Below are positions 2,706-25,206 of a stretch of 64,000 nt of DNA, one piece after another (the first letter of the stretch is position 1; every line of letters begins with the position of its first letter). The notes under the pieces are model-generated. The model had not been told where the DNA came from. It did no database searches and was given only the letters and a program-made list of their open reading frames with translations. The stretch lies in sequence record PV158447.1; one strand, 5' to 3'. A program made the translations under genes and the position numbers.

Positions 2706-3839
2706 TTAGATTTCCATGTCGTCAAAAGCGCCGTCAGGAACCTCACTATTGATTTGACCAGTGAGGTATTGCGAGGCACTTACTTCTTGCGGAGCCGCTT
2801 GGACGTTGTCAGAAGACAGATAGGTATTCACCCAAGGGATTGGGTTAGCGACTGCATCCGGATAGATGGAGGGAAGTCCAATTGCCTTCATCCGAAGGTT
2901 AGTAAGGTATTCGATGTACTGACAGAGGATCTGTTTGTTCAGTCCAATCATCGAACCGTCTTTCATCAAGTAGCCGGCCCAGTCTTTCTCTTGTTCAGCA
3001 GCATCACGGAAGATTGCAATACTCTCTGCGTGACACTCAATGGCAATTTCAGCCATTTCCGGATCATCGCGATTATCAGCCCAGAGGTTGATAATCCATT
3101 GGGTCCCAGTCATGTGGGTGCTTTCGTCACGACTGATAAGAGTGATGATTTTAGCGTTACCCTCCATCAGTTTCCTTTCTGCAAAAGCAAAGGAACATGC
3201 AAAGGAGACATAGAACCGAATCGCTTCCAGGGCATTGATAGATTGCATACAGAGATACAGTTTCTTTTTGATATCTCGTACCTTCACAACTATCTTTTTA
3301 CCATTGACCTGATGAGTACCTTCACCAAGCCCATAATACAAGTTGGTCAGGTGAATCAATTCGTCATAGTACTTAGAGACTGCCACTGCTCGTTTCATGA
3401 TCGCTTCGTTTTCCACGATGTCTTCGAAGATTTCGGAAGGATCAGTGAAGAGGTTACGAAGAATATGTGTATACGAACGAGAGTGGATAGTTTCAAAAGC
3501 AGACCAGGTTTCGATCCAGGTCTCCAGTTCCGGGATCGAAACCAGAGGGAGGAGGGCAACGTTAGGAGACCGACCTTGGATAGAGTCCAACAGGGTCTGG
3601 TATTTCAGGTTGCTGATAAAAATGTGTTTCTCGTTATCTGGGAGAGCTTGGAAGTCAATCCGGTCTTTTGTGATATCCACTTCTTCTGGGCGCCAGAAAA
3701 ATGAGAGCTGCTTCTCGATCAGAGATTCGAAGATGGAAAACTTCTGTTGATCGTAGCGGGCTACGTTAACGTTTTGACCAAAGAACATGTGTTCTTTGAG
3801 CTGGTCGTTTTTATTCTGGTTGAATACGGAGTAAGTCAT
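2706..3839 (-). CDS. nrdB: Ribonucleotide reductase class Ia beta subunit
   Basis: [29 protein letters not shown] (radical Tyr), [20 protein letters not shown] motifs. Confidence 0.97.
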
Positions 3840-4037: not shown

Positions 4038-4078
4038 AAGTTCCATTTTATTTGAGATAGATATTATTAATATGTATA
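4038..4078 (+). promoter_or_regulatory. Phage early-type promoter, copy 1
   Basis: AAGTTCCATTTTATTTGAGATAGATATTATTAATATGTATA; recurs upstream of seven + strand units; core resembles the phiKZ early TATATTAC motif. Confidence 0.75.
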
Positions 4079-15397: not shown

Positions 15398-15793
15398 ATG
15401 TTCGTATTACCGACAACTCGTGGAACACATCGTCATGTTTTTATCTCTAACAAGTTTGTAGTGAAGATCCCCCGTATCAGTGCGTGGTGGAAATTCTCTC
15501 CTGATGTTGAACGGTTCAAAGAGAACTTGTATCTCAACAAAATGGAGATTGAGCTCTGCAAGAAACATGCTGGTGAAAAAGGAATTCCCAAACTTTACTT
15601 TGGTGGGTTCTTTGGCTTGTTGGTGATCATGAAACGGTACCAACAGTTTGAAGATCGCGAGGAATACATGGACAAACTCTCTGTACTCATTGAGAAAAGC
15701 CCACTTCCCCGTGAGTTTTGGGAAGATGATGCGCACATGAATAATTTCGGTTTCGATTACGACGGTTCCATTGTTAAAATTGATTTGGGGTAA
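15398..15793 (+). CDS. Minimal protein-kinase-like protein 1 (131 aa)
   Basis: RGTHRHVF, VVKIP, NKME, IPKLY, LLVIMKR, DDAHMNNFG, KIDLG in kinase subdomain order. Confidence 0.7.
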   Translation: MFVLPTTRGTHRHVFISNKFVVKIPRISAWWKFSPDVERFKENLYLNKMEIELCKKHAGEKGIPKLYFGGFFGLLVIMKRYQQFEDREEYMDKLSVLIEKSPLPREFWEDDAHMNNFGFDYDGSIVKIDLG

Positions 15794-17497: not shown

Positions 17498-18255
17498 AAA
17501 ACGCATTTGATGCAGTGAGGGAATTCGAAGAACAGATCGATACTTTTTGTTCTTTTGGATTTGAGAGTTATCATGAAACTGTGAAGAGTGTTTGTTTGGA
17601 CGCTCTTTCGTTTCTTGGCGAGCTTGAAAGGAAGGATCTGGTATTCTCATCAGGGACAGTTACTCCGTTGGCCGAAAGTTTGCGCTCAATCACATCTCCA
17701 TTGATCCCTGGGGGTTTTAAACCCTGGGTTTTTATATTCCTTGGTGACCGTAAAGAAACAGGCAAGTTCTTTAAGGAACATCCGGAGTTCAAAGAGAGAT
17801 TTGAATCCACTTGTCAGGCTATAGAACTGTTGGCTAAAGACATCCCGATAGAACACTGGAACTGGTTCAACCAGCAACAACGAATCAAGAACAGCCCCTA
17901 TCCATCTGAACCGAGGGTAGTGAGGACTGTCCAGGACTTGCTGGTTGTCTTGGTAGACGTCCCTCACAAAGATACTCCGATCGACTCCCTTCGGATACCT
18001 CGTCGGGACGAAGGGATGTTTGATATTGATCTTTTCTCCGGTGAATTCCGTGGGGAAATCATTACCAGACAACGGTTCAATCCTAAAACAATTCTGGATG
18101 CCACGATAATCTCTAGTTCGCTCACGGTTCAGGGTTTGATCGACATATTGAAACTGGCTCATCCAGATGCCTTTATTAACGATATTCGTTTGAAAGGTGC
18201 CGATAACGCCATTTACTTCGCGTACGAAGAAGACGGTGTAGTGATGCACGATTAA
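17494..18255 (+). CDS. Hypothetical protein (253 aa)
   Basis: ATGA overlap, GGGGAG SD. Confidence 0.8.
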   Translation: MKNAFDAVREFEEQIDTFCSFGFESYHETVKSVCLDALSFLGELERKDLVFSSGTVTPLAESLRSITSPLIPGGFKPWVFIFLGDRKETGKFFKEHPEFKERFESTCQAIELLAKDIPIEHWNWFNQQQRIKNSPYPSEPRVVRTVQDLLVVLVDVPHKDTPIDSLRIPRRDEGMFDIDLFSGEFRGEIITRQRFNPKTILDATIISSSLTVQGLIDILKLAHPDAFINDIRLKGADNAIYFAYEEDGVVMHD

Positions 18256-18264
18256 CGTTCGGTA

Positions 18265-18295
18265 ATCCTCCTGACCCACAGTGGGTCAGGAGGAT
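18265..18295. terminator. Intrinsic terminator hairpin
   Basis: ATCCTCCTGACCC-ACAGT-GGGTCAGGAGGAT. Confidence 0.75.
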
Positions 18296-18425
18296 ATTGA
18301 ATTCTGTTATTTATTTTATTACTTACGGGACGGGTAACGCTTCGATCTCAAATGTATGAGCACCCAGGGTGTAAAGACTACCTATTTCCTTATGTTATTT
18401 GGGGTGAGTCCCCAAAGCATTTCTT

Positions 18426-18466
18426 CAGTTCCATTTATTTTGAGATAGATATTATTAATATGTATA
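18426..18466 (+). promoter_or_regulatory. Phage early-type promoter, copy 3
   Basis: CAGTTCCATTTATTTTGAGATAGATATTATTAATATGTATA. Confidence 0.75.
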
Positions 18467-18500
18467 GATTTCAAGATACATTTAATTTAGGAGTAACGAA

Positions 18501-18953
18501 ATGAATTTGATTACCAAGTTAACTTGTTGGGTATTTAGTAAATTTGGACCAGAAGAACGTGCAGAAGGGAGAGATCGTCAGGTCTTTATCTTTAAAAATA
18601 AAGTCATCAAAGTGCCACAAATGACTGACTGGTTATCGTTTATCAGGGGATATTACTCTAACCTAAAAGAACTCGATAGTATCCAAGATTATACCGGAAA
18701 CTTTAAAGAACATCTTCCCGTAATCTTGGGGAGTTATTGTTTTGGATTAATTGTTGTTTATGTCCGCTATAAAGAAGTTGGTTTGGTGAATTCAGAAGAC
18801 GAAACTATTCGTTATAAGGATCGGTTGATGCTCATACGTAATGAAGAGCATCCAGGGCATTCATACATCTGGTTTAACGATCCAAAGATTTTTAACTACG
18901 GTTGGGATAAGTTTGGTAGATTGGTAATTATTGACATCGGAACGCCTTACTAA
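18501..18953 (+). CDS. Minimal protein-kinase-like protein 2 (150 aa)
   Basis: EGRDRQVF, VIKVP, NLKE, LPVIL, GLIVVYVRY, NDPKIFNYG, IIDIG; paralog of 15398..15793. Confidence 0.65.
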   Translation: MNLITKLTCWVFSKFGPEERAEGRDRQVFIFKNKVIKVPQMTDWLSFIRGYYSNLKELDSIQDYTGNFKEHLPVILGSYCFGLIVVYVRYKEVGLVNSEDETIRYKDRLMLIRNEEHPGHSYIWFNDPKIFNYGWDKFGRLVIIDIGTPY

Positions 18954-18965
18954 TGGGGGAAAGAA

Positions 18966-20000
18966 ATGAAGAAAGAAATTACTTGCGTAAATGAATTCGA
19001 GAAATGGTATCTGGAACTTCTCACCACGGTTATGAATCTTGGTACGGTGAAATCTGACCGCACCGGTACCGGTACCCGTTCTCTGAGTTTTGCCAATTAC
19101 GTCCACGATCTACGTTCTGGACTTCCACACATTCGGAGTCGCTACCTCCGGCCTGATCGTCCTGGACGTGAGATGATCTGGATGTTGTCCGGTTCCAGCA
19201 ACGTGAAAGATCTTCAGGCTCTGGATGTTCCCTTCTGGAATGAGTTTGCGGATGAGACTGGTGAACTAGGTCCGGTATATGGTTACCTGTGGCGCCACTG
19301 GCCGAATGGGGACGGTACCGAGACCGATCAGATCAAGTACATCGAAGACCTGCTCAAGAATAATCCGGATTCTCGTCGGATGGTGGTTAACTGTTGGCAT
19401 CCTTCTTACATTCCGGAAAGTAGCACTTCCCCTAAGGAGAACTACAAGTTTGGGAAGCAAGCACTCACTCCTTGTCATTTCAACTGGGGAGTGGTTACTG
19501 AAGAACTTTCTTGGGCTGATCGGATGGCGTGGCTGAAAGAAAATATGCCGAGTCGTAACGCATCTCTTTACCCCGTTCATGGTGCCGGATGGGTAGAAGA
19601 AACTGTCGAGAAACTCGACCAGTGGGGTGTTCCCAAACGCTACCTGGATCTGTCGTTCAGTATGCGGAGTAATGACACTGTTCTAGGTCTTCCTGCCAAC
19701 TTCAACATGTACGCTCACCTGGCAGAGATGCTGGCTAAAACCAATAACATGATTCCTCGCTATTTGAGTTTCAATGGTGTTGGTGACGTCCACATGTACC
19801 TCGATCACATCAGGGGCGTGAAAGAGCAGTTGGCTTGGGTGAGGGATAATGAAGAGGCCGTTTACTCTCAAGTAACCAAGTTGAAGATCTTGAATGTTCG
19901 GGAATCGATCACGGAATACGTTCCGAGTGATTTTGAATACGAGAACTACAACAAGGAAGATGTGGGTCCTGCCATCAAGTTCCCGATTGCTGTCGGGTAG
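18966..20000 (+). CDS. thyA: Thymidylate synthase
   Basis: DRTGTGT, EMIWMLSG, LGPVYG, SRRMVV, PCH catalytic Cys, RSND..LGLPAN, GDVHMYLDH. Confidence 0.97.
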   Translation: MKKEITCVNEFEKWYLELLTTVMNLGTVKSDRTGTGTRSLSFANYVHDLRSGLPHIRSRYLRPDRPGREMIWMLSGSSNVKDLQALDVPFWNEFADETGELGPVYGYLWRHWPNGDGTETDQIKYIEDLLKNNPDSRRMVVNCWHPSYIPESSTSPKENYKFGKQALTPCHFNWGVVTEELSWADRMAWLKENMPSRNASLYPVHGAGWVEETVEKLDQWGVPKRYLDLSFSMRSNDTVLGLPANFNMYAHLAEMLAKTNNMIPRYLSFNGVGDVHMYLDHIRGVKEQLAWVRDNEEAVYSQVTKLKILNVRESITEYVPSDFEYENYNKEDVGPAIKFPIAVG

Positions 20001-20783: not shown

Positions 20784-21452
20784 ATGACAAATAAGAAAAT
20801 TATCCTTGCTTTTGATATGGATGACACACTGGTGCGTACCGGGGAATATCTCCATTTCAATCTCCGTCACTTGTTGAAGATGGAATCTCGTCCTGATCTG
20901 ATCGCTGAAATTGATGAACTCAGGGAGAAGGGATACTCTACTATGAACTATCCTCTTCATTTGAAAGAACTGATCGACAAACATTTTGTTGGAACAGGTC
21001 AGTTTATGTTGGATGCCCAGCCCAGTGAATTGTGTTCTCTCAAAGACATCTCATCTCTTCGAGATCTCCTGCAAGAATTCCAGGGTATTATCATTCCGCT
21101 CATTTGTACTCACCGTGGATTCCACGAATATGGGGACCAGTACACCCGGGTCTGGATTGAGCGACGAGGGCTTTCCACCCTATTCGGGAATGTTCACTGT
21201 ATCGATCCACAAGAACACAAAGATAAGATCGTTTATCTGAAAAGTCTTTATCCTGATGACGAAATCGTTCTGGTTGACGACAATCCGCTGGGTAAACACG
21301 ATGGTGTCCATGAATTCCGTAAAGAGATTCTTCTTTACGAAGAAGAGAACCCCCTCACTGCCTACGGTGAAATGAAGAAAATCAAATCCATGAACTGTGT
21401 TATCGAACACGTTTCTGAACTCGTATATCAACTGAAAGGATGGGAAGCATAA
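20784..21452 (+). CDS. HAD-superfamily hydrolase (putative nucleotidase)
   Basis: LAFDMDDTL (motif I), ICTHRG, K, LVDDNP (motif IV). Confidence 0.8.
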   Translation: MTNKKIILAFDMDDTLVRTGEYLHFNLRHLLKMESRPDLIAEIDELREKGYSTMNYPLHLKELIDKHFVGTGQFMLDAQPSELCSLKDISSLRDLLQEFQGIIIPLICTHRGFHEYGDQYTRVWIERRGLSTLFGNVHCIDPQEHKDKIVYLKSLYPDDEIVLVDDNPLGKHDGVHEFRKEILLYEEENPLTAYGEMKKIKSMNCVIEHVSELVYQLKGWEA

Positions 21453-21946
21453 TGGCTCACGAATTGGTTTGGGTAGACTACAATAACTACAACGAAATGC
21501 TGACTCCGGAACAACAAAAGAAGTTGGTAGCAATCGCTACCTCTCTTCAACGATTGGAAAAAGAGTGGGTTGTTTTTAACCACGAGAAAAACCGTCCTGT
21601 CCGGTTGTACAATTACCTGGAAGATCTTTTCTACGTTCCTTGGGAGAACCACGGTATCGGTCTGGTTGTGCTGAAGGTAGATGGTGAACCAATTGGTATG
21701 TATCAGGTTGTGTTGGATGAATCTGATCTCTCGGTTGGGACCATCCTTACTGTCGCAATCGATGAAGAACACCGCAACAAAGGTTATGGGAAAATCCTTA
21801 TGCAGGAATCCAGTCACCTGCTGTCGGAACGCGGTATCTTCACAACCCAACTTTCTTTTGACAGCTCCAATCCCGTTGCCAAGAAGTTTTATACTTCCCT
21901 GGGTTATATTGAACGTACCATAGTAATGATGAAAGGACCGAAGTAA
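21452..21946 (+). CDS. GNAT-family acetyltransferase (164 aa)
   Basis: VAIDEEHRNKGYGKILM acetyl-CoA motif A; NPVAKKFYTSLGY motif B. Confidence 0.9.
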   Translation: MAHELVWVDYNNYNEMLTPEQQKKLVAIATSLQRLEKEWVVFNHEKNRPVRLYNYLEDLFYVPWENHGIGLVVLKVDGEPIGMYQVVLDESDLSVGTILTVAIDEEHRNKGYGKILMQESSHLLSERGIFTTQLSFDSSNPVAKKFYTSLGYIERTIVMMKGPK

Positions 21947-22483
21947 ATGACCAACACAATCGTCAGTATGATCATGGCTCATGATGCTCTTGGTGGTGTG
22001 GCAATTGATAACCATCTTCCCTGGAAGCACAACAAAGAAGATATGGAGTGGTTTGTTAAACAGACTAAAGGTAAGGTAGTGGTGATGGGTCGTAAGACTT
22101 GGGAATCACTTCCTATTAAACCACTTCCTGGTCGAATCAATATTGTTCTTACCGCGACTCCCATTCCCGGTGTAGAAACCTTTAGTACGGTAGAAGCGAT
22201 TCTGGAACGCTGTGAGGGCATTCCAGAGATTATGGTCATGGGTGGTCCCCAAGTGTACAAAGCGTTTTCAGAACACGTTACACGCGCTTACATTACTCGT
22301 ATCGGATCGATCAACCCTTCGGACATCTCTCTTGCTCAAGAAAGTCACCCTTGGGAAGATTGGGACATGGTTTATTTTGATACACTGACAAGTGAAACAA
22401 CTTCATTTGTGGTTTATCAAGATCTGGATAATCCTGGTCTGGACATTTATTTTACCAAAGGCATGGTCTCTGAGAAGGAATGA
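21947..22483 (+). CDS. folA: Dihydrofolate reductase
   Basis: LPWKHNKEDM, VVMGRKTWESLP, PLPGRINIVLT, GGPQVY. Confidence 0.95.
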   Translation: MTNTIVSMIMAHDALGGVAIDNHLPWKHNKEDMEWFVKQTKGKVVVMGRKTWESLPIKPLPGRINIVLTATPIPGVETFSTVEAILERCEGIPEIMVMGGPQVYKAFSEHVTRAYITRIGSINPSDISLAQESHPWEDWDMVYFDTLTSETTSFVVYQDLDNPGLDIYFTKGMVSEKE

Positions 22484-22770: not shown

Positions 22771-22808
22771 TTCTATATTTTTTCAAATAGATATTATTAA
22801 GTTGTATA
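22771..22808 (+). promoter_or_regulatory. Phage early-type promoter, copy 4 (divergent 5' half)
   Basis: TTTTCAAATAGATATTATTAAGTTGTATA. Confidence 0.65.
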
Positions 22809-23610: not shown

Positions 23611-25206
23611 ATGTCTATTCTGAACGAACAAACTTTCACCAATTCTGCTGATACCCGTAAACTGGTGGACGAAGTTGTTGAATACGCAAAACAATCAGTC
23701 TGTTCTACCATGGGTCCGGAAGGTCAGTATGTGGTGATCAATAATAATAACAAACCGCTGGTGACTAAAGACGGCGTTTCGGTAGCCAAAGCCTTAGACT
23801 TCAACGAACCTCGCAGGAACCTGATCGCTAACATCATCATGGAACCGTCCATTAAGACCGATCAAGAAGTAGGTGATGGCACGACCACTACCGTCTTCAT
23901 GATGGAAGCGTTCTATTCGAAGTTCAAAGACCAGATGACATTCCGAGGTATTCGTTACCTGGACGGTTTGGTGGAACGGACCAGAAAGATTCTGAACGAC
24001 ATGGTCATTCCTGGGGATGTTCACTCCGAGCGTTTCCGCAAAATGTTGATGACCACCTCCAACTACGAAACCGAAATCGTCGATACTGTCCTGAAGATCT
24101 ACCGTGAATACGATAATCCGAACATCATTCTCCGTGAAGTCCCAAGCCTGCCTGAAGACACTGTCGAAACTAACACTCAGGTTTATGTTCCTGGTGGTTA
24201 TGCGGCTGATGAGTTCACTCCTCGGACTAACGCTGATGGGATCCGTGCTCTTGACGGAGTTGATGGATATCGGGTAGTGGTGATTGACCATCACTTCAGT
24301 AATGTGGATGCTGGTAAACTGGCTCAATTGGTTCTGGAAGATAAAAGCGCTCCGTATCAGAAACCGATTGTGATCTTTGCTCGTAACTTCGATCCTGTTG
24401 TATTGACTATTCTGAAGAACCAGATTCAACAACTGGGGGTAAACATCATTCCGTTCCGGATTGACGCAGGTGGCTCCATTGGCGCTGGTGTGGTACGTGA
24501 CCTCTGTGAAATCTTGGGTACAACTGCAATCTCTGACATGTCTGGTATCACTGAAACTCAATTGAAAGAGATTCATGTTCCAATGGTGCTTGGTCCTCGT
24601 GCTGTGTTCTTTGACCGTAAGGAGAACGAACATATTGATCAAGTCTGCGATGTTATCGTATCTGAGCTCCAAGCTCGTTACGACCAGATGACAGTAATTG
24701 ACCGTCAGACTCCGATTGGGCTCATTCTGATGGATCGTATCTCTCGTCTGAGCGGTTCTAACGTTATCATCAAAGTGACTGGTACAGTTCCCTCCGAAGC
24801 GAAGGAACGTTACTATCGTTTTGAAGACGCAATCAAAGCTGCAAAGACTGGTAAGATCTTTGGGGTACTTCCCGGTATCGGTTGTGGCTATCTGGGCGCT
24901 GCTAAGATCTTGTTTATGGAGTGTGATCCCAAGGATGCATTTGAAGAGAAACTCCTGATGGATTTCATCGAAGTCCTGGAGTCCCCTTATAAACACCTGA
25001 CAGGTCAGAACGATTACCAAACCAAGAATCAGAAACCTGCCCAGTTCCTGGACTTGGTCACTGGTGAAGTGAGTGAACGTGTTGACAACGTGTTCGATAA
25101 CGCTGCTGCAACGATGACAGCGCTGTCTGGCGGGTGGAGCACAGCAAAGACCTTGGCTAAGCTGAACAACATCATGGGTCGTTCCATGAAACAATATACC
25201 AAGTAA
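23611..25206 (+). CDS. Phage chaperonin (GroEL-like, 531 aa)
   Basis: TMGPEG, TKDGVSVAK, VGDGTTT, RFEDAIKAA, PGIGCG; no GGM tail. Confidence 0.93.
   Translation: MSILNEQTFTNSADTRKLVDEVVEYAKQSVCSTMGPEGQYVVINNNNKPLVTKDGVSVAKALDFNEPRRNLIANIIMEPSIKTDQEVGDGTTTTVFMMEAFYSKFKDQMTFRGIRYLDGLVERTRKILNDMVIPGDVHSERFRKMLMTTSNYETEIVDTVLKIYREYDNPNIILREVPSLPEDTVETNTQVYVPGGYAADEFTPRTNADGIRALDGVDGYRVVVIDHHFSNVDAGKLAQLVLEDKSAPYQKPIVIFARNFDPVVLTILKNQIQQLGVNIIPFRIDAGGSIGAGVVRDLCEILGTTAISDMSGITETQLKEIHVPMVLGPRAVFFDRKENEHIDQVCDVIVSELQARYDQMTVIDRQTPIGLILMDRISRLSGSNVIIKVTGTVPSEAKERYYRFEDAIKAAKTGKIFGVLPGIGCGYLGAAKILFMECDPKDAFEEKLLMDFIEVLESPYKHLTGQNDYQTKNQKPAQFLDLVTGEVSERVDNVFDNAAATMTALSGGWSTAKTLAKLNNIMGRSMKQYTK

What the first reader, a model, noticed from the sequence alone, without database searches (positions are those of the whole stretch)
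18501..18953. Second mini-kinase paralog heading the thyA operon
Seen: 150 aa with the same skeleton as the 15398 protein (GxxRxVFI, VxKxP, NxxE, P, FGLxV, RY, DxxxxNxGxDxxGxxVxIDxG), ending 3 residues after DIG. It is the first gene behind early promoter copy 3. Inference: two diverged copies truncated at nearly the same point argue that the short form is the functional family, not decay.
Basis: partly seen in the sequence, partly recalled or inferred. Interest (0 to 1): 0.65.

Follow-up and report, generated by a model that had tools for sequence, protein, structure and literature searches.

The report
Half-size phage kinase ending at DFG
A 150-residue gene of an Aeromonas jumbo phage encodes the ATP-binding and catalytic front part of a protein kinase and stops naturally right after the magnesium-binding aspartate. 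About a hundred relatives in other phages do the same, so this may be the smallest kinase-type enzyme core known, though its activity and target are untested.

Summary
The window is Aeromonas phage AhC3_1 (PV158447.1), and 18501-18953 is its ORF29, 150 aa, annotated as hypothetical.

ORF29 is a significant paralog of ORF24 at 15398-15793 (BLASTP E 1e-12). Both belong to the unnamed phage family phrog_4301.

- **Family shape:** a profile search of 1.8 billion proteins found 100 cluster representatives, mostly 115-135 aa. More than half end within 2 residues of the DxG motif.
- **Fold:** AlphaFold models of both copies (pLDDT 87 and 91) match only protein-kinase-like structures such as RIO2, Bud32, OspG, ArkI and CK2. 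They lack everything after the DFG position.
- **Conservation:** the beta3 Lys, alphaC Glu and DFG Asp are 99-100% conserved. The catalytic Asp and Asn are 81-86% conserved.
- **Selection:** dN/dS against a 91%-identical relative is 0.09.

So the short form is the functional form, not decay.

The gene follows a strong terminator and the third of six copies of a phage promoter motif. thyA starts 12 nt after its stop. "Early" timing is inferred, not shown.

This scan reached the same reading on related phages (PS1, PS2, D3, D6) and on ORF24 of this window.

The parts
18265..18295 (+). Intrinsic-terminator-type hairpin (14-bp stem, 3-nt loop, T-rich tail) that closes the upstream unit after ORF28
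   Evidence: -31.8 kcal/mol, z -6.5; one compensatory A-T to G-C change in the related contig L014.
18301..18426 (+). Unusually conserved intergenic stretch upstream of the promoter motif. It holds the small hairpin 18398-18416 and most of an unannotated 50-codon ORF (18352-18504). Function unknown.
   Evidence: 96.8% identical to L014, against 77% for ORF28 and 88% for ORF29; no Rfam match.
18427..18466 (+). Phage promoter-like motif, copy 3 of 6 in the window (core AGATATTATTAATATGTA at 18447-18464)
   Evidence: six + strand copies against 0 expected, each 35-60 nt before a gene start. The phage encodes multisubunit RNA polymerase pieces. PMC7598289 describes AT-rich conserved early-promoter motifs in such phages.
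18489..18494 (+). Ribosome-binding site AGGAGT, 6 nt before the ATG
   Evidence: Sequence read. The leader 18467-18500 is 100% conserved in L014.
18501..18953 (+). ORF29: a 150-aa mini kinase-fold protein (phrog_4301, A-type paralog). Key residues: K37, E57, D127, K129, N132, D145. It stops 5 residues after D145.
15398..15793 (+). ORF24: the 131-aa B-type paralog. Key residues: K23, E50, D111, N116, D129. It has His instead of Lys at D+2 and ends exactly at D-L-G.
18966..20000 (+). Thymidylate synthase (ThyA), the next gene, 12 nt downstream with its own GGGGGAAAG ribosome-binding site
   Evidence: PF00303, E 2.9e-59. (no hairpin in the spacer). The same arrangement is seen in L014.
20784..22483 (+). 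Rest of the putative unit before the next promoter copy at 22789: a HAD-type phosphatase-like protein (20784-21452), a GNAT acetyltransferase (21452-21946) and dihydrofolate reductase (21947-22483)

Best explanation
ORF29 is an intact gene under purifying selection. It encodes a member of a large, unnamed phage family (phrog_4301) that is a naturally truncated protein-kinase-like domain. The protein keeps the five-stranded N-lobe sheet, a long alphaC helix, a hinge, one alphaE-like helix, the catalytic loop (D127-x-K129-x-x-N132) and the metal-binding D145-x-G. It then stops. The activation segment and helices alphaF to alphaI are absent. I infer, but have not shown, that it binds ATP-Mg in the cleft formed by K37-E57, the invariant R26 of the beta1-beta2 loop, N132 and D145. 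I further infer that it transfers the gamma-phosphate with D127 as the catalytic base. Because it has no substrate-docking lobe, it should either act promiscuously on host or phage macromolecules or need a partner. Protein substrates are favoured, by analogy with the early T7 kinase. The gene is the first one behind a phage-specific promoter copy. It is probably co-transcribed with thyA, a HAD phosphatase, a GNAT and DHFR, and is likely early. ORF24 is an old paralog of a second orthologous type, not a recent copy.
For: Shown:
- Paralogy to ORF24 at E 1e-12.
- phrog_4301 membership at E 1.7e-15.
- 100 relatives, mostly 115-135 aa, ending at DxG.
- AF2 models with pLDDT 87.2 and 91.3.
- Every top structural match is a kinase-fold protein. 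Foldseek finds RIO2 at E 3.7e-5, then RIOK1/3, APH(2''), WbdD, AceK, OspG and CK2. VIA-align gives Z 7-9.5 for 49 kinase-fold entries of 50 listed, including Bud32 at Z 8.2 and ArkI at Z 7.9.
- The family profile hits almost only eukaryotic-type kinases in the PDB, aligned on sDiKPeNfG...vKiDYG against TTK sDLKPaNF...LIDFG (E 0.009).
- Weak per-member Pfam hits to ABC1, FAM69 kinase and APH.
- G23, R26, K37 and E57 are 100% conserved, D145 99%, N132 86% and D127 81%.
- dN/dS is 0.094.
- Two orthologous clades are shared with phage D3.
- Terminator, promoter motif and ribosome-binding site are in place, with thyA tightly linked.
- A few GenBank and UniProt records of relatives already read 'serine/threonine kinase' or 'protein kinase domain-containing'.

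Inferred: catalysis, ATP as the donor, the substrate class and the timing.
Against: - No Pfam, NCBIfam or PDB sequence match reaches a curated threshold.
- The glycine-rich loop is not GxGxxG.
- The alphaF helix, which anchors the catalytic loop and both hydrophobic spines in all kinases known to me, is absent, so activity without a partner has no precedent.
- No neighbouring gene is conserved across phages that could point to a substrate.
- RNA evidence is limited to read-length contigs in wastewater metatranscriptomes, which could be DNA carry-over.
- The AF2 models are predictions from a family alignment, and the N-terminal helix 3-15 has only moderate confidence.
Confidence: 0.58

Rival explanations
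1. It is an active phosphotransferase, but its substrate is RNA, a nucleotide or another small molecule rather than protein. One example would be an ArkI-like RNA 2'-OH kinase. Another would be an enzyme tied to nucleotide metabolism.
For: - The small archaeal tRNA kinase ArkI is among the best compact structural matches: 8yv5_B, Z 7.9, rmsd 3.2 over 115 residues (ArkI biology from PMC9095486).
- The family is basic, with a median pI of 9.2.
- Relatives sit next to RNA ligase 2 in JS10 and one gene before the tRNA cluster in a T4-like phage.
- Relatives also sit next to thyA here, DHFR in RP12, NrdD/NrdG and a class II ribonucleotide reductase region in NP1.
- The same putative unit here holds a HAD protein that resembles the phosphatase part of polynucleotide kinase.
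Against: These contexts are anecdotal. Early regions of large phages are full of nucleotide-metabolism genes, and other members sit among anonymous small genes. ORF29 and ORF24 themselves are near neutral, with pI 7.7-7.8. Small-molecule kinases of this fold build their substrate pocket from the C-lobe, which is missing here. ArkI needs its C-terminal helices for tRNA binding (PMC9095486).
Confidence: 0.22
2. It is not a self-sufficient enzyme. It could be a nucleotide-binding module or pseudokinase-like scaffold that works only when a partner covers the exposed alphaE face. That partner could be the other paralog, another phage protein or a host protein. Alternatively it could act purely by binding or sequestering a host factor or nucleotide.
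For: - The whole alphaF-alphaI core is missing.
- OspG, a structural match (4q5e_A), is solved bound to an E2-ubiquitin conjugate; as I recall, that binding activates it.
- Aeromonas jumbo phages keep two or more diverged paralogs.
- The B-type paralogs lack the Lys at D+2.
Against: Near-complete conservation of the Lys, Glu, Asp, Asn and Asp set across about 100 diverged clusters is typical of active enzymes, not pseudokinases. T4-like and 58-kb Pseudomonas phages carry a single copy, so a paralog heterodimer cannot be the general rule. No conserved neighbour was found. The complex prediction could not be run.
Confidence: 0.18
3. It is a decaying fragment of a full-length kinase gene, or a chance ORF.
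For: The protein is half the size of any characterised kinase. No curated family matches it.
Against: dN/dS is 0.094. The same end point recurs in about 100 clusters. The downstream DNA is thyA, not a C-lobe remnant. Even the 209-aa RP12 form adds only a charged tail, not a C-lobe.
Confidence: 0.01

Closest known systems
phrog_4301 (PHROGs v4, 'unknown function')
   Same: ORF29, ORF24 and all tested relatives match it (E 1e-15 to 1e-68). It is the sequence family these proteins belong to.
   Different: The family has no name, no described function and no paper that I could find. Its 225-column profile is built around longer RP12-like members, and the short members cover only columns about 40-170.
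RIO kinases (RIO2, RIO1, RIOK3) and Bud32/PRPK, the smallest well-studied atypical protein kinases
   Same: They are the best fold matches: Foldseek E 3.7e-5 to RIO2, and VIA Z 8.0-8.6 to Rio1, Rio2, RIOK3 and Bud32. Both sides have the N-lobe, the Lys-Glu pair, the D-x4-N catalytic loop and the metal-binding Asp, and both lack an activation loop.
   Different: RIO and Bud32 are 210-290 aa and keep C-lobe helices after the metal-binding loop. RIO also has extra N-terminal elements. No Pfam RIO1 or Kdo/Bud32-type hit was found. The phage proteins end at DxG.
OspG/NleH 'minimal kinase' effectors (PDB 4q5e)
   Same: A compact kinase fold without an activation segment: TM 0.52 normalised to the query and 0.48 to the target, over 140 columns. 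It is a precedent for a stripped-down kinase that depends on a bound partner.
   Different: OspG has about 170-196 residues with C-lobe helices and is a secreted bacterial effector that acts in eukaryotic cells. There is no detectable sequence relationship.
ArkI, the archaeal tRNA 2'-kinase (PDB 8yv5; PMC9095486)
   Same: A small kinase of the eukaryotic protein kinase superfamily that lacks subdomains VIII and X: Z 7.9, rmsd 3.2. It shows that this fold can phosphorylate RNA.
   Different: ArkI keeps subdomains IX and XI and a basic C-terminal helix needed for tRNA binding. Its catalytic motifs are HGQ and DFE. It is found in thermophilic archaea and bacteria, not phages.
T7 gp0.7 kinase (T7K; PHROG 2828; PMC13645617)
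   Same: A possible functional analogue: an early phage kinase that phosphorylates many host proteins and disarms defence systems.
   Different: It is a different family. Only ORF24 gives a weak hit to a gp0.7-type PHROG (E 0.049). T7K has a full-size kinase domain plus a DNA-binding shut-off domain and a DPV motif instead of DFG. Some E. coli jumbo phages, such as G17, carry both a T7K homologue and a phrog_4301 member (PMC13645617).

Membership tests
Protein-kinase-like (PKL) fold superfamily | N-lobe beta-sheet with the beta3 Lys paired to the alphaC Glu | tested here: met
   AF2 strands 19-22, 26-30, 34-39, 75-79 and 84-88, and helix 44-71. K37 and E57 are invariant in 96 sequences.
Protein-kinase-like (PKL) fold superfamily | Catalytic loop D-x-x-x-x-N followed by a metal-binding Asp (the DFG position) | tested here: met
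   D127 81% (the rest Glu), N132 86%, D145 99%. The profile aligns this block to the HRDLKPxN...DFG block of TTK, CK1 and p38.
Protein-kinase-like (PKL) fold superfamily | Helical C-lobe core (alphaF and following helices) that anchors the catalytic loop | tested here: not met
   The protein ends 5 residues after D145 (3 after G147). 52 of 92 relatives end within 2 residues of DxG. The models have only one helix (99-115) between hinge and catalytic loop.
Protein-kinase-like (PKL) fold superfamily | ATP-dependent phosphotransfer activity | not testable with these tools
   This needs biochemistry.
Eukaryotic-type protein kinases (Pfam Pkinase PF00069) | Score above the Pfam gathering threshold; a GxGxxG loop; an activation segment with APE | tested here: not met
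   No Pkinase hit even at E<=10. The loop is G-x-x-R. There is no activation segment.
RIO kinase family (Pfam RIO1 PF01163) | Match to the family model; RIO-specific N-terminal helix and C-lobe helices | tested here: not met
   No RIO1 hit for any of 96 members. The similarity is structural only.
phrog_4301 | Significant match to the family profile | tested here: met
   ORF29 E 1.7e-15, ORF24 E 1.6e-14. There are two places in the genome and none in 14 control bacterial and archaeal genomes.
T7 gp0.7-type phage kinases | Match to the gp0.7 kinase-domain profile | tested here: not met
   ORF29 has no hit. ORF24 has only E 0.049 to phrog_15752. The ESM Atlas nearest named cluster is Phage_T7_kinase at 0.93 with 168 shared features, which is a lead only.

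The most novel reading that the evidence does not exclude
The 115-150-residue phrog_4301 proteins are self-sufficient, catalytically active kinases. They would be the smallest enzymes of the protein-kinase fold, reduced to the core shared with ATP-grasp and PIP-kinase enzymes (that shared-core comparison is from my own recall). Diverse phages of Proteobacteria would deploy them early as promiscuous host-takeover or anti-defence kinases, with A-type and B-type paralogs in Aeromonas jumbo phages specialised for different targets.
Probability: 0.3. Interest if true: 0.8.

Novelty: new variant of a known kind. Interest (0 to 1): 0.62.

Why it matters
If active, these proteins would redefine the minimal catalytic unit of the protein-kinase fold. 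Every characterised kinase I know of keeps the alphaF-centred C-lobe, and even the 'minimal' ones (Bud32, RIO, OspG, ArkI) have 170-290 residues. They would also add a second widespread family of phage kinases beside T7 gp0.7, which was recently shown to disarm bacterial defences (PMC13645617). Members occur in tractable E. coli phages, both T4-like and Asteriusvirus, so the question is directly testable. A 2026 review of jumbo-phage biology does not mention kinases at all.

Tried and rejected
- **Complex prediction:** Nothing can be said about dimerisation.
- **Word-based protein search:** it found only one 91% relative.
- **The search for related loci:** nothing with the single proteins.
- **Whole-genome search:** The genome search 'own' is unavailable because no genome is held. 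The record was searched through a handle instead.
- **PDB sequence search with the 3-sequence profile:** only chance cohesin hits.
- **P0005:** this 3447-aa repetitive adhesin-like protein with 15 matched stretches is a false positive and was left out.
- **Shewanella SXP01:** the 'virion structural protein' label belongs to a neighbouring gene that merely abuts the match.
- **RNA evidence:** four wastewater RNA-library runs gave only 151-nt contigs, at 96-99% identity, over parts of ORF29 and thyA. This shows neither transcription nor timing.
- **Other scans:** no tRNA genes in the window, no Rfam family in the upstream region, and no sigma-70-like promoter before ORF29.
- **Terminator-like site inside ORF29 (18714-18733):** weak and within coding sequence, so taken as chance.
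- **Literature:** searches for a described mini-kinase or phage half-kinase found nothing.
- **Tree:** only the quick version finished.

Full report
**Identity of the window.** The window is the first 64 kb of Aeromonas phage AhC3_1 (PV158447.1). This is a 232,884-bp jumbo phage of A. hydrophila, and window and record coordinates are the same. The finding is its ORF29, annotated as 'hypothetical protein'.

**Observation.** The ORF at 18501-18953 encodes 150 aa. It aligns to the 131-aa product of 15398-15793 (ORF24) with BLASTP E 1e-12 and 27% identity over 134 columns. A family profile finds exactly these two places in the whole phage genome.

**Family.**
- Pfam and NCBIfam give nothing usable.
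- Both proteins match PHROG phrog_4301, 'unknown function', at E about 1e-15.
- tblastn against 50,697 phage records finds the ORF29 type in 34 records.
- A typical family member finds 126 records. These include Aeromonas, Erwinia, Klebsiella, Ralstonia, Shewanella and Pseudomonas OBP jumbo phages, 350-kb E. coli Asteriusvirus phages, T4-like phages (Dhakavirus, Tequatrovirus), and 58-kb Pseudomonas, Xanthomonas and Variovorax siphophages. Every host named in these records that I recognise belongs to the Proteobacteria.
- A few of these records already carry the label 'serine/threonine kinase'. UniProt names the RP12 protein 'Protein kinase domain-containing protein'. I found no paper on the family.
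- A profile search of 1.84 billion representative proteins gave 100 hits at E<=1e-3. One of them, P0005, is a repetitive 3447-aa false positive.
- The rest are mostly 115-135 aa. Of 92 with a recognisable DxG, 52 end within 2 residues of it and 63 within 6.
- The longest relatives add no kinase C-lobe. The RP12 209-aa form adds a short YF..LG stretch and a charged tail. The C-terminal parts of the 313-350-aa forms match no Pfam family.
- The ESM Atlas neighbours are all 'hypothetical', 113-142 aa and mostly viral. phrog_4301 hits none of 14 control cellular genomes.

**Fold.**
- AlphaFold2 with a 96-sequence alignment gives a confident model of ORF29, with pLDDT 87.2 and pTM 0.78.
- After an N-terminal helix (3-15, moderate confidence, specific to the ORF29 clade) come three strands, with K37 on the third. 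Next is a long helix (44-71) with E57, then two strands and a hinge.
- One helix follows (99-115). After it come the loop D127-P-K129-I-F-N132, two short strands and D145.
- ORF24 gives the same architecture, with pLDDT 91.3.
- Foldseek against the PDB returns only kinase-fold proteins. For ORF29 these are RIO2 (E 3.7e-5), RIOK1/3, APH(2''), capreomycin phosphotransferase, AceK, WbdD and OspG. For ORF24 they are WbdD, CK2alpha, RIO2, phosphorylase kinase, PRPK and POMK.
- An independent all-against-all alignment to 48,161 chains lists 50 entries at Z 7.2-9.5. Of these, 49 are kinase-fold proteins, including Bud32 (Z 8.2), Rio1/Rio2 (8.0-8.2) and the 173-residue RNA kinase ArkI (Z 7.9, rmsd 3.2). 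The other is SAICAR synthetase, whose fold, as I recall, is ATP-grasp-like and related to the kinase fold.
- The alignments always stop at the target's DFG region.
- At the sequence level, the 96-member profile hits 74 PDB sequences at E<=10, almost all eukaryotic-type kinases. The family consensus sDiKPeNfGy..grlvKiDYg lies on TTK's sDLKPaNFli.dGmLkLIDFG (best E 0.009). Single members give weak hits to ABC1, FAM69-kinase and APH models.

**Conservation and selection.**
- In the 96-sequence alignment G23, R26, K37 and E57 are invariant. D145 is 99% conserved, P39 99%, N54 95%, N132 86%, D127 81% (the rest Glu) and K129 67%.
- The invariant Arg in the beta1-beta2 turn replaces the usual glycine-rich loop.
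- Against a 91%-identical relative on a metagenomic contig (L014), ORF29 has dN 0.054 and dS 0.57, giving dN/dS 0.094. That contig has the same ORF28, ORF29, thyA order.
- A quick maximum-likelihood tree puts ORF29 with P0001, D3 gp085 and P0002 (SH-aLRT 99). It puts ORF24 with D3 gp083, P0004 and P0006 (99). The duplication is therefore older than the split of these phage lineages, and both types have been kept.
- The ORF24 (B) type consistently lacks the Lys two residues after the catalytic Asp (H, C, I or T instead). The ORF29 (A) type keeps it. As I recall, RIO and Bud32 also lack this Lys, so this need not mean inactivity.

**Surroundings.**
- ORF28 ends at 18255 and is followed by a 14-bp hairpin with a T-rich tail (18265-18295, -31.8 kcal/mol, z -6.5). 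One compensatory change is seen in L014.
- At 18427-18466 lies a 40-nt motif whose core, ANATATTAT-N5-TGTA, occurs six times in the window: at 4059, 12597, 18447, 22789, 27706 and 43256. All copies are on the + strand and each sits just upstream of a gene start, against 0 expected. The copy before ORF29 is indeed the third.
- The phage encodes multisubunit RNA polymerase fragments (see also earlier finding s1-157445). For such phages a conserved AT-rich motif upstream of early operons is the virion-polymerase promoter wherever it has been tested (PMC7598289). 'Early' is therefore a reasonable inference, not a result.
- An AGGAG ribosome-binding site precedes the ATG.
- thyA (PF00303, E 3e-59) starts 12 nt after the stop, with no hairpin between.
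- The next promoter copy is at 22789. The putative unit is therefore ORF29, thyA, small membrane-like ORFs, a HAD-type protein with similarity to the phosphatase part of polynucleotide kinase, a GNAT, DHFR and ORF35.

**Search for a functional clue.** Neighbours of relatives differ from phage to phage:

| Phage or contig | Neighbour of the mini-kinase gene |
|---|---|
| JS10 | RNA ligase 2 |
| RP12 | DHFR |
| D3 | a phosphoesterase upstream, thyA 2.4 kb downstream |
| metagenomic contig (P0010) | NrdD/NrdG |
| NP1 | endonuclease, NTP hydrolase and ribonucleotide reductase |
| Tequatrovirus G4507 | the tRNA cluster, one gene away |
| three others (metagenomic contig with P0016; EJP2; AH04) | blocks of anonymous small genes |

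Nucleotide-metabolism and RNA themes recur, but no partner gene is conserved. The family is basic (median pI 9.2), although ORF29 and ORF24 are near neutral. PADLOC gives only a weak hit of the RP12 form to the PD-T4-6 defence kinase, over the catalytic loop.

**Mechanism.**
- Shown: an intact, selected gene; a kinase-like fold cut at the DFG position; a complete set of nucleotide- and metal-binding and catalytic residues; and placement behind a phage promoter motif, tightly linked to thyA.
- Inferred: ATP-Mg binding and phosphotransfer. The complete absence of the C-lobe means there is no built-in substrate-docking surface and no alphaF anchor.
- I therefore consider an active but promiscuous or partner-assisted kinase most likely (about 0.6 for catalysis of some kind, protein substrates somewhat favoured). 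The rivals, in order, are an RNA or nucleotide substrate, a partner-dependent or non-catalytic nucleotide-binding module, and gene decay, which is excluded.
Single-copy phages argue that a paralog heterodimer is not a general requirement.

**Comparison and novelty.** By fold this is a protein-kinase-like domain. By architecture it meets no membership test of a named kinase family: Pkinase, RIO1 and the T7 gp0.7 type are all not met. It also lacks a defining structural part of the superfamily, the C-lobe core. It is best filed as a new variant of a known kind: phrog_4301, a phage family of half-size kinase domains. This scan reached the same reading for ORF24 of this window (s1-161423) and for related phages PS1, PS2, D3 and D6. 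My tests were run independently of those notes.

Noticed in passing
window 18301-18500: The intergenic DNA before ORF29 is better conserved than the flanking genes when compared with the related contig L014. Positions 18301-18426 are 96.8% identical and the leader 18467-18500 is 100% identical, against 77% for ORF28 and 88% for ORF29. The stretch holds a small hairpin (18398-18416) and an unannotated 50-codon ORF (18352-18504) whose stop overlaps the ORF29 start (ATGA). There is no Rfam match. It could be a regulatory element, a small RNA or a recombination boundary.
   Followed up: partly
window 4059, 12597, 18447, 22789, 27706, 43256 (+ strand): Six copies of a roughly 40-nt promoter-like motif (core ANATATTAT-N5-TGTA, preceded by TTTTTAAGTTCCATTT-like sequence), each just upstream of a gene block. 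They probably mark the virion-RNA-polymerase (early) promoters of this phage. Transcription start sites are not mapped.
   Followed up: partly
window 15398-15793 and relatives (D3 gp083, P0004, P0006): The B-type paralog clade has lost the Lys two residues after the catalytic Asp (D-x-K-x-x-N becomes D-x-H/C/I/T-x-x-N), while the A-type clade keeps it. This is a possible functional split between the two paralogs.
   Followed up: partly
window 20784-21452: ORF32 is a HAD-type protein with a DMDDT motif. It matches phrog_16292 and shows local similarity to the phosphatase part of polynucleotide kinase (phrog_415, E 1.6e-7). It lies in the same putative unit as the mini-kinase, thyA and DHFR. It could be a nucleotidase or an RNA/DNA 3'-phosphatase.
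   Followed up: no
window 23611-25206: ORF37 (531 aa, annotated as hypothetical) looks by eye like a GroEL/Cpn60-type chaperonin (GDGTTT motif). It follows a ClpP-like 'head maturation protease'. I did not test this with a family scan.
   Followed up: no
window 18966-20000: The thymidylate synthase is 344 aa, about 80 residues longer than the 266-column Pfam model it spans end to end, so it carries insertions. The D3 homologue is longer still, at 460 aa.
   Followed up: no
locus L010 (Tequatrovirus G4507) 2986-3366; locus L002 (JS10) 2489-2857: In T4-like phages the single mini-kinase gene sits in variable early regions. It lies one gene upstream of the tRNA cluster in G4507 and immediately upstream of rnlB in JS10. 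These E. coli phages would be convenient for experiments.
   Followed up: partly
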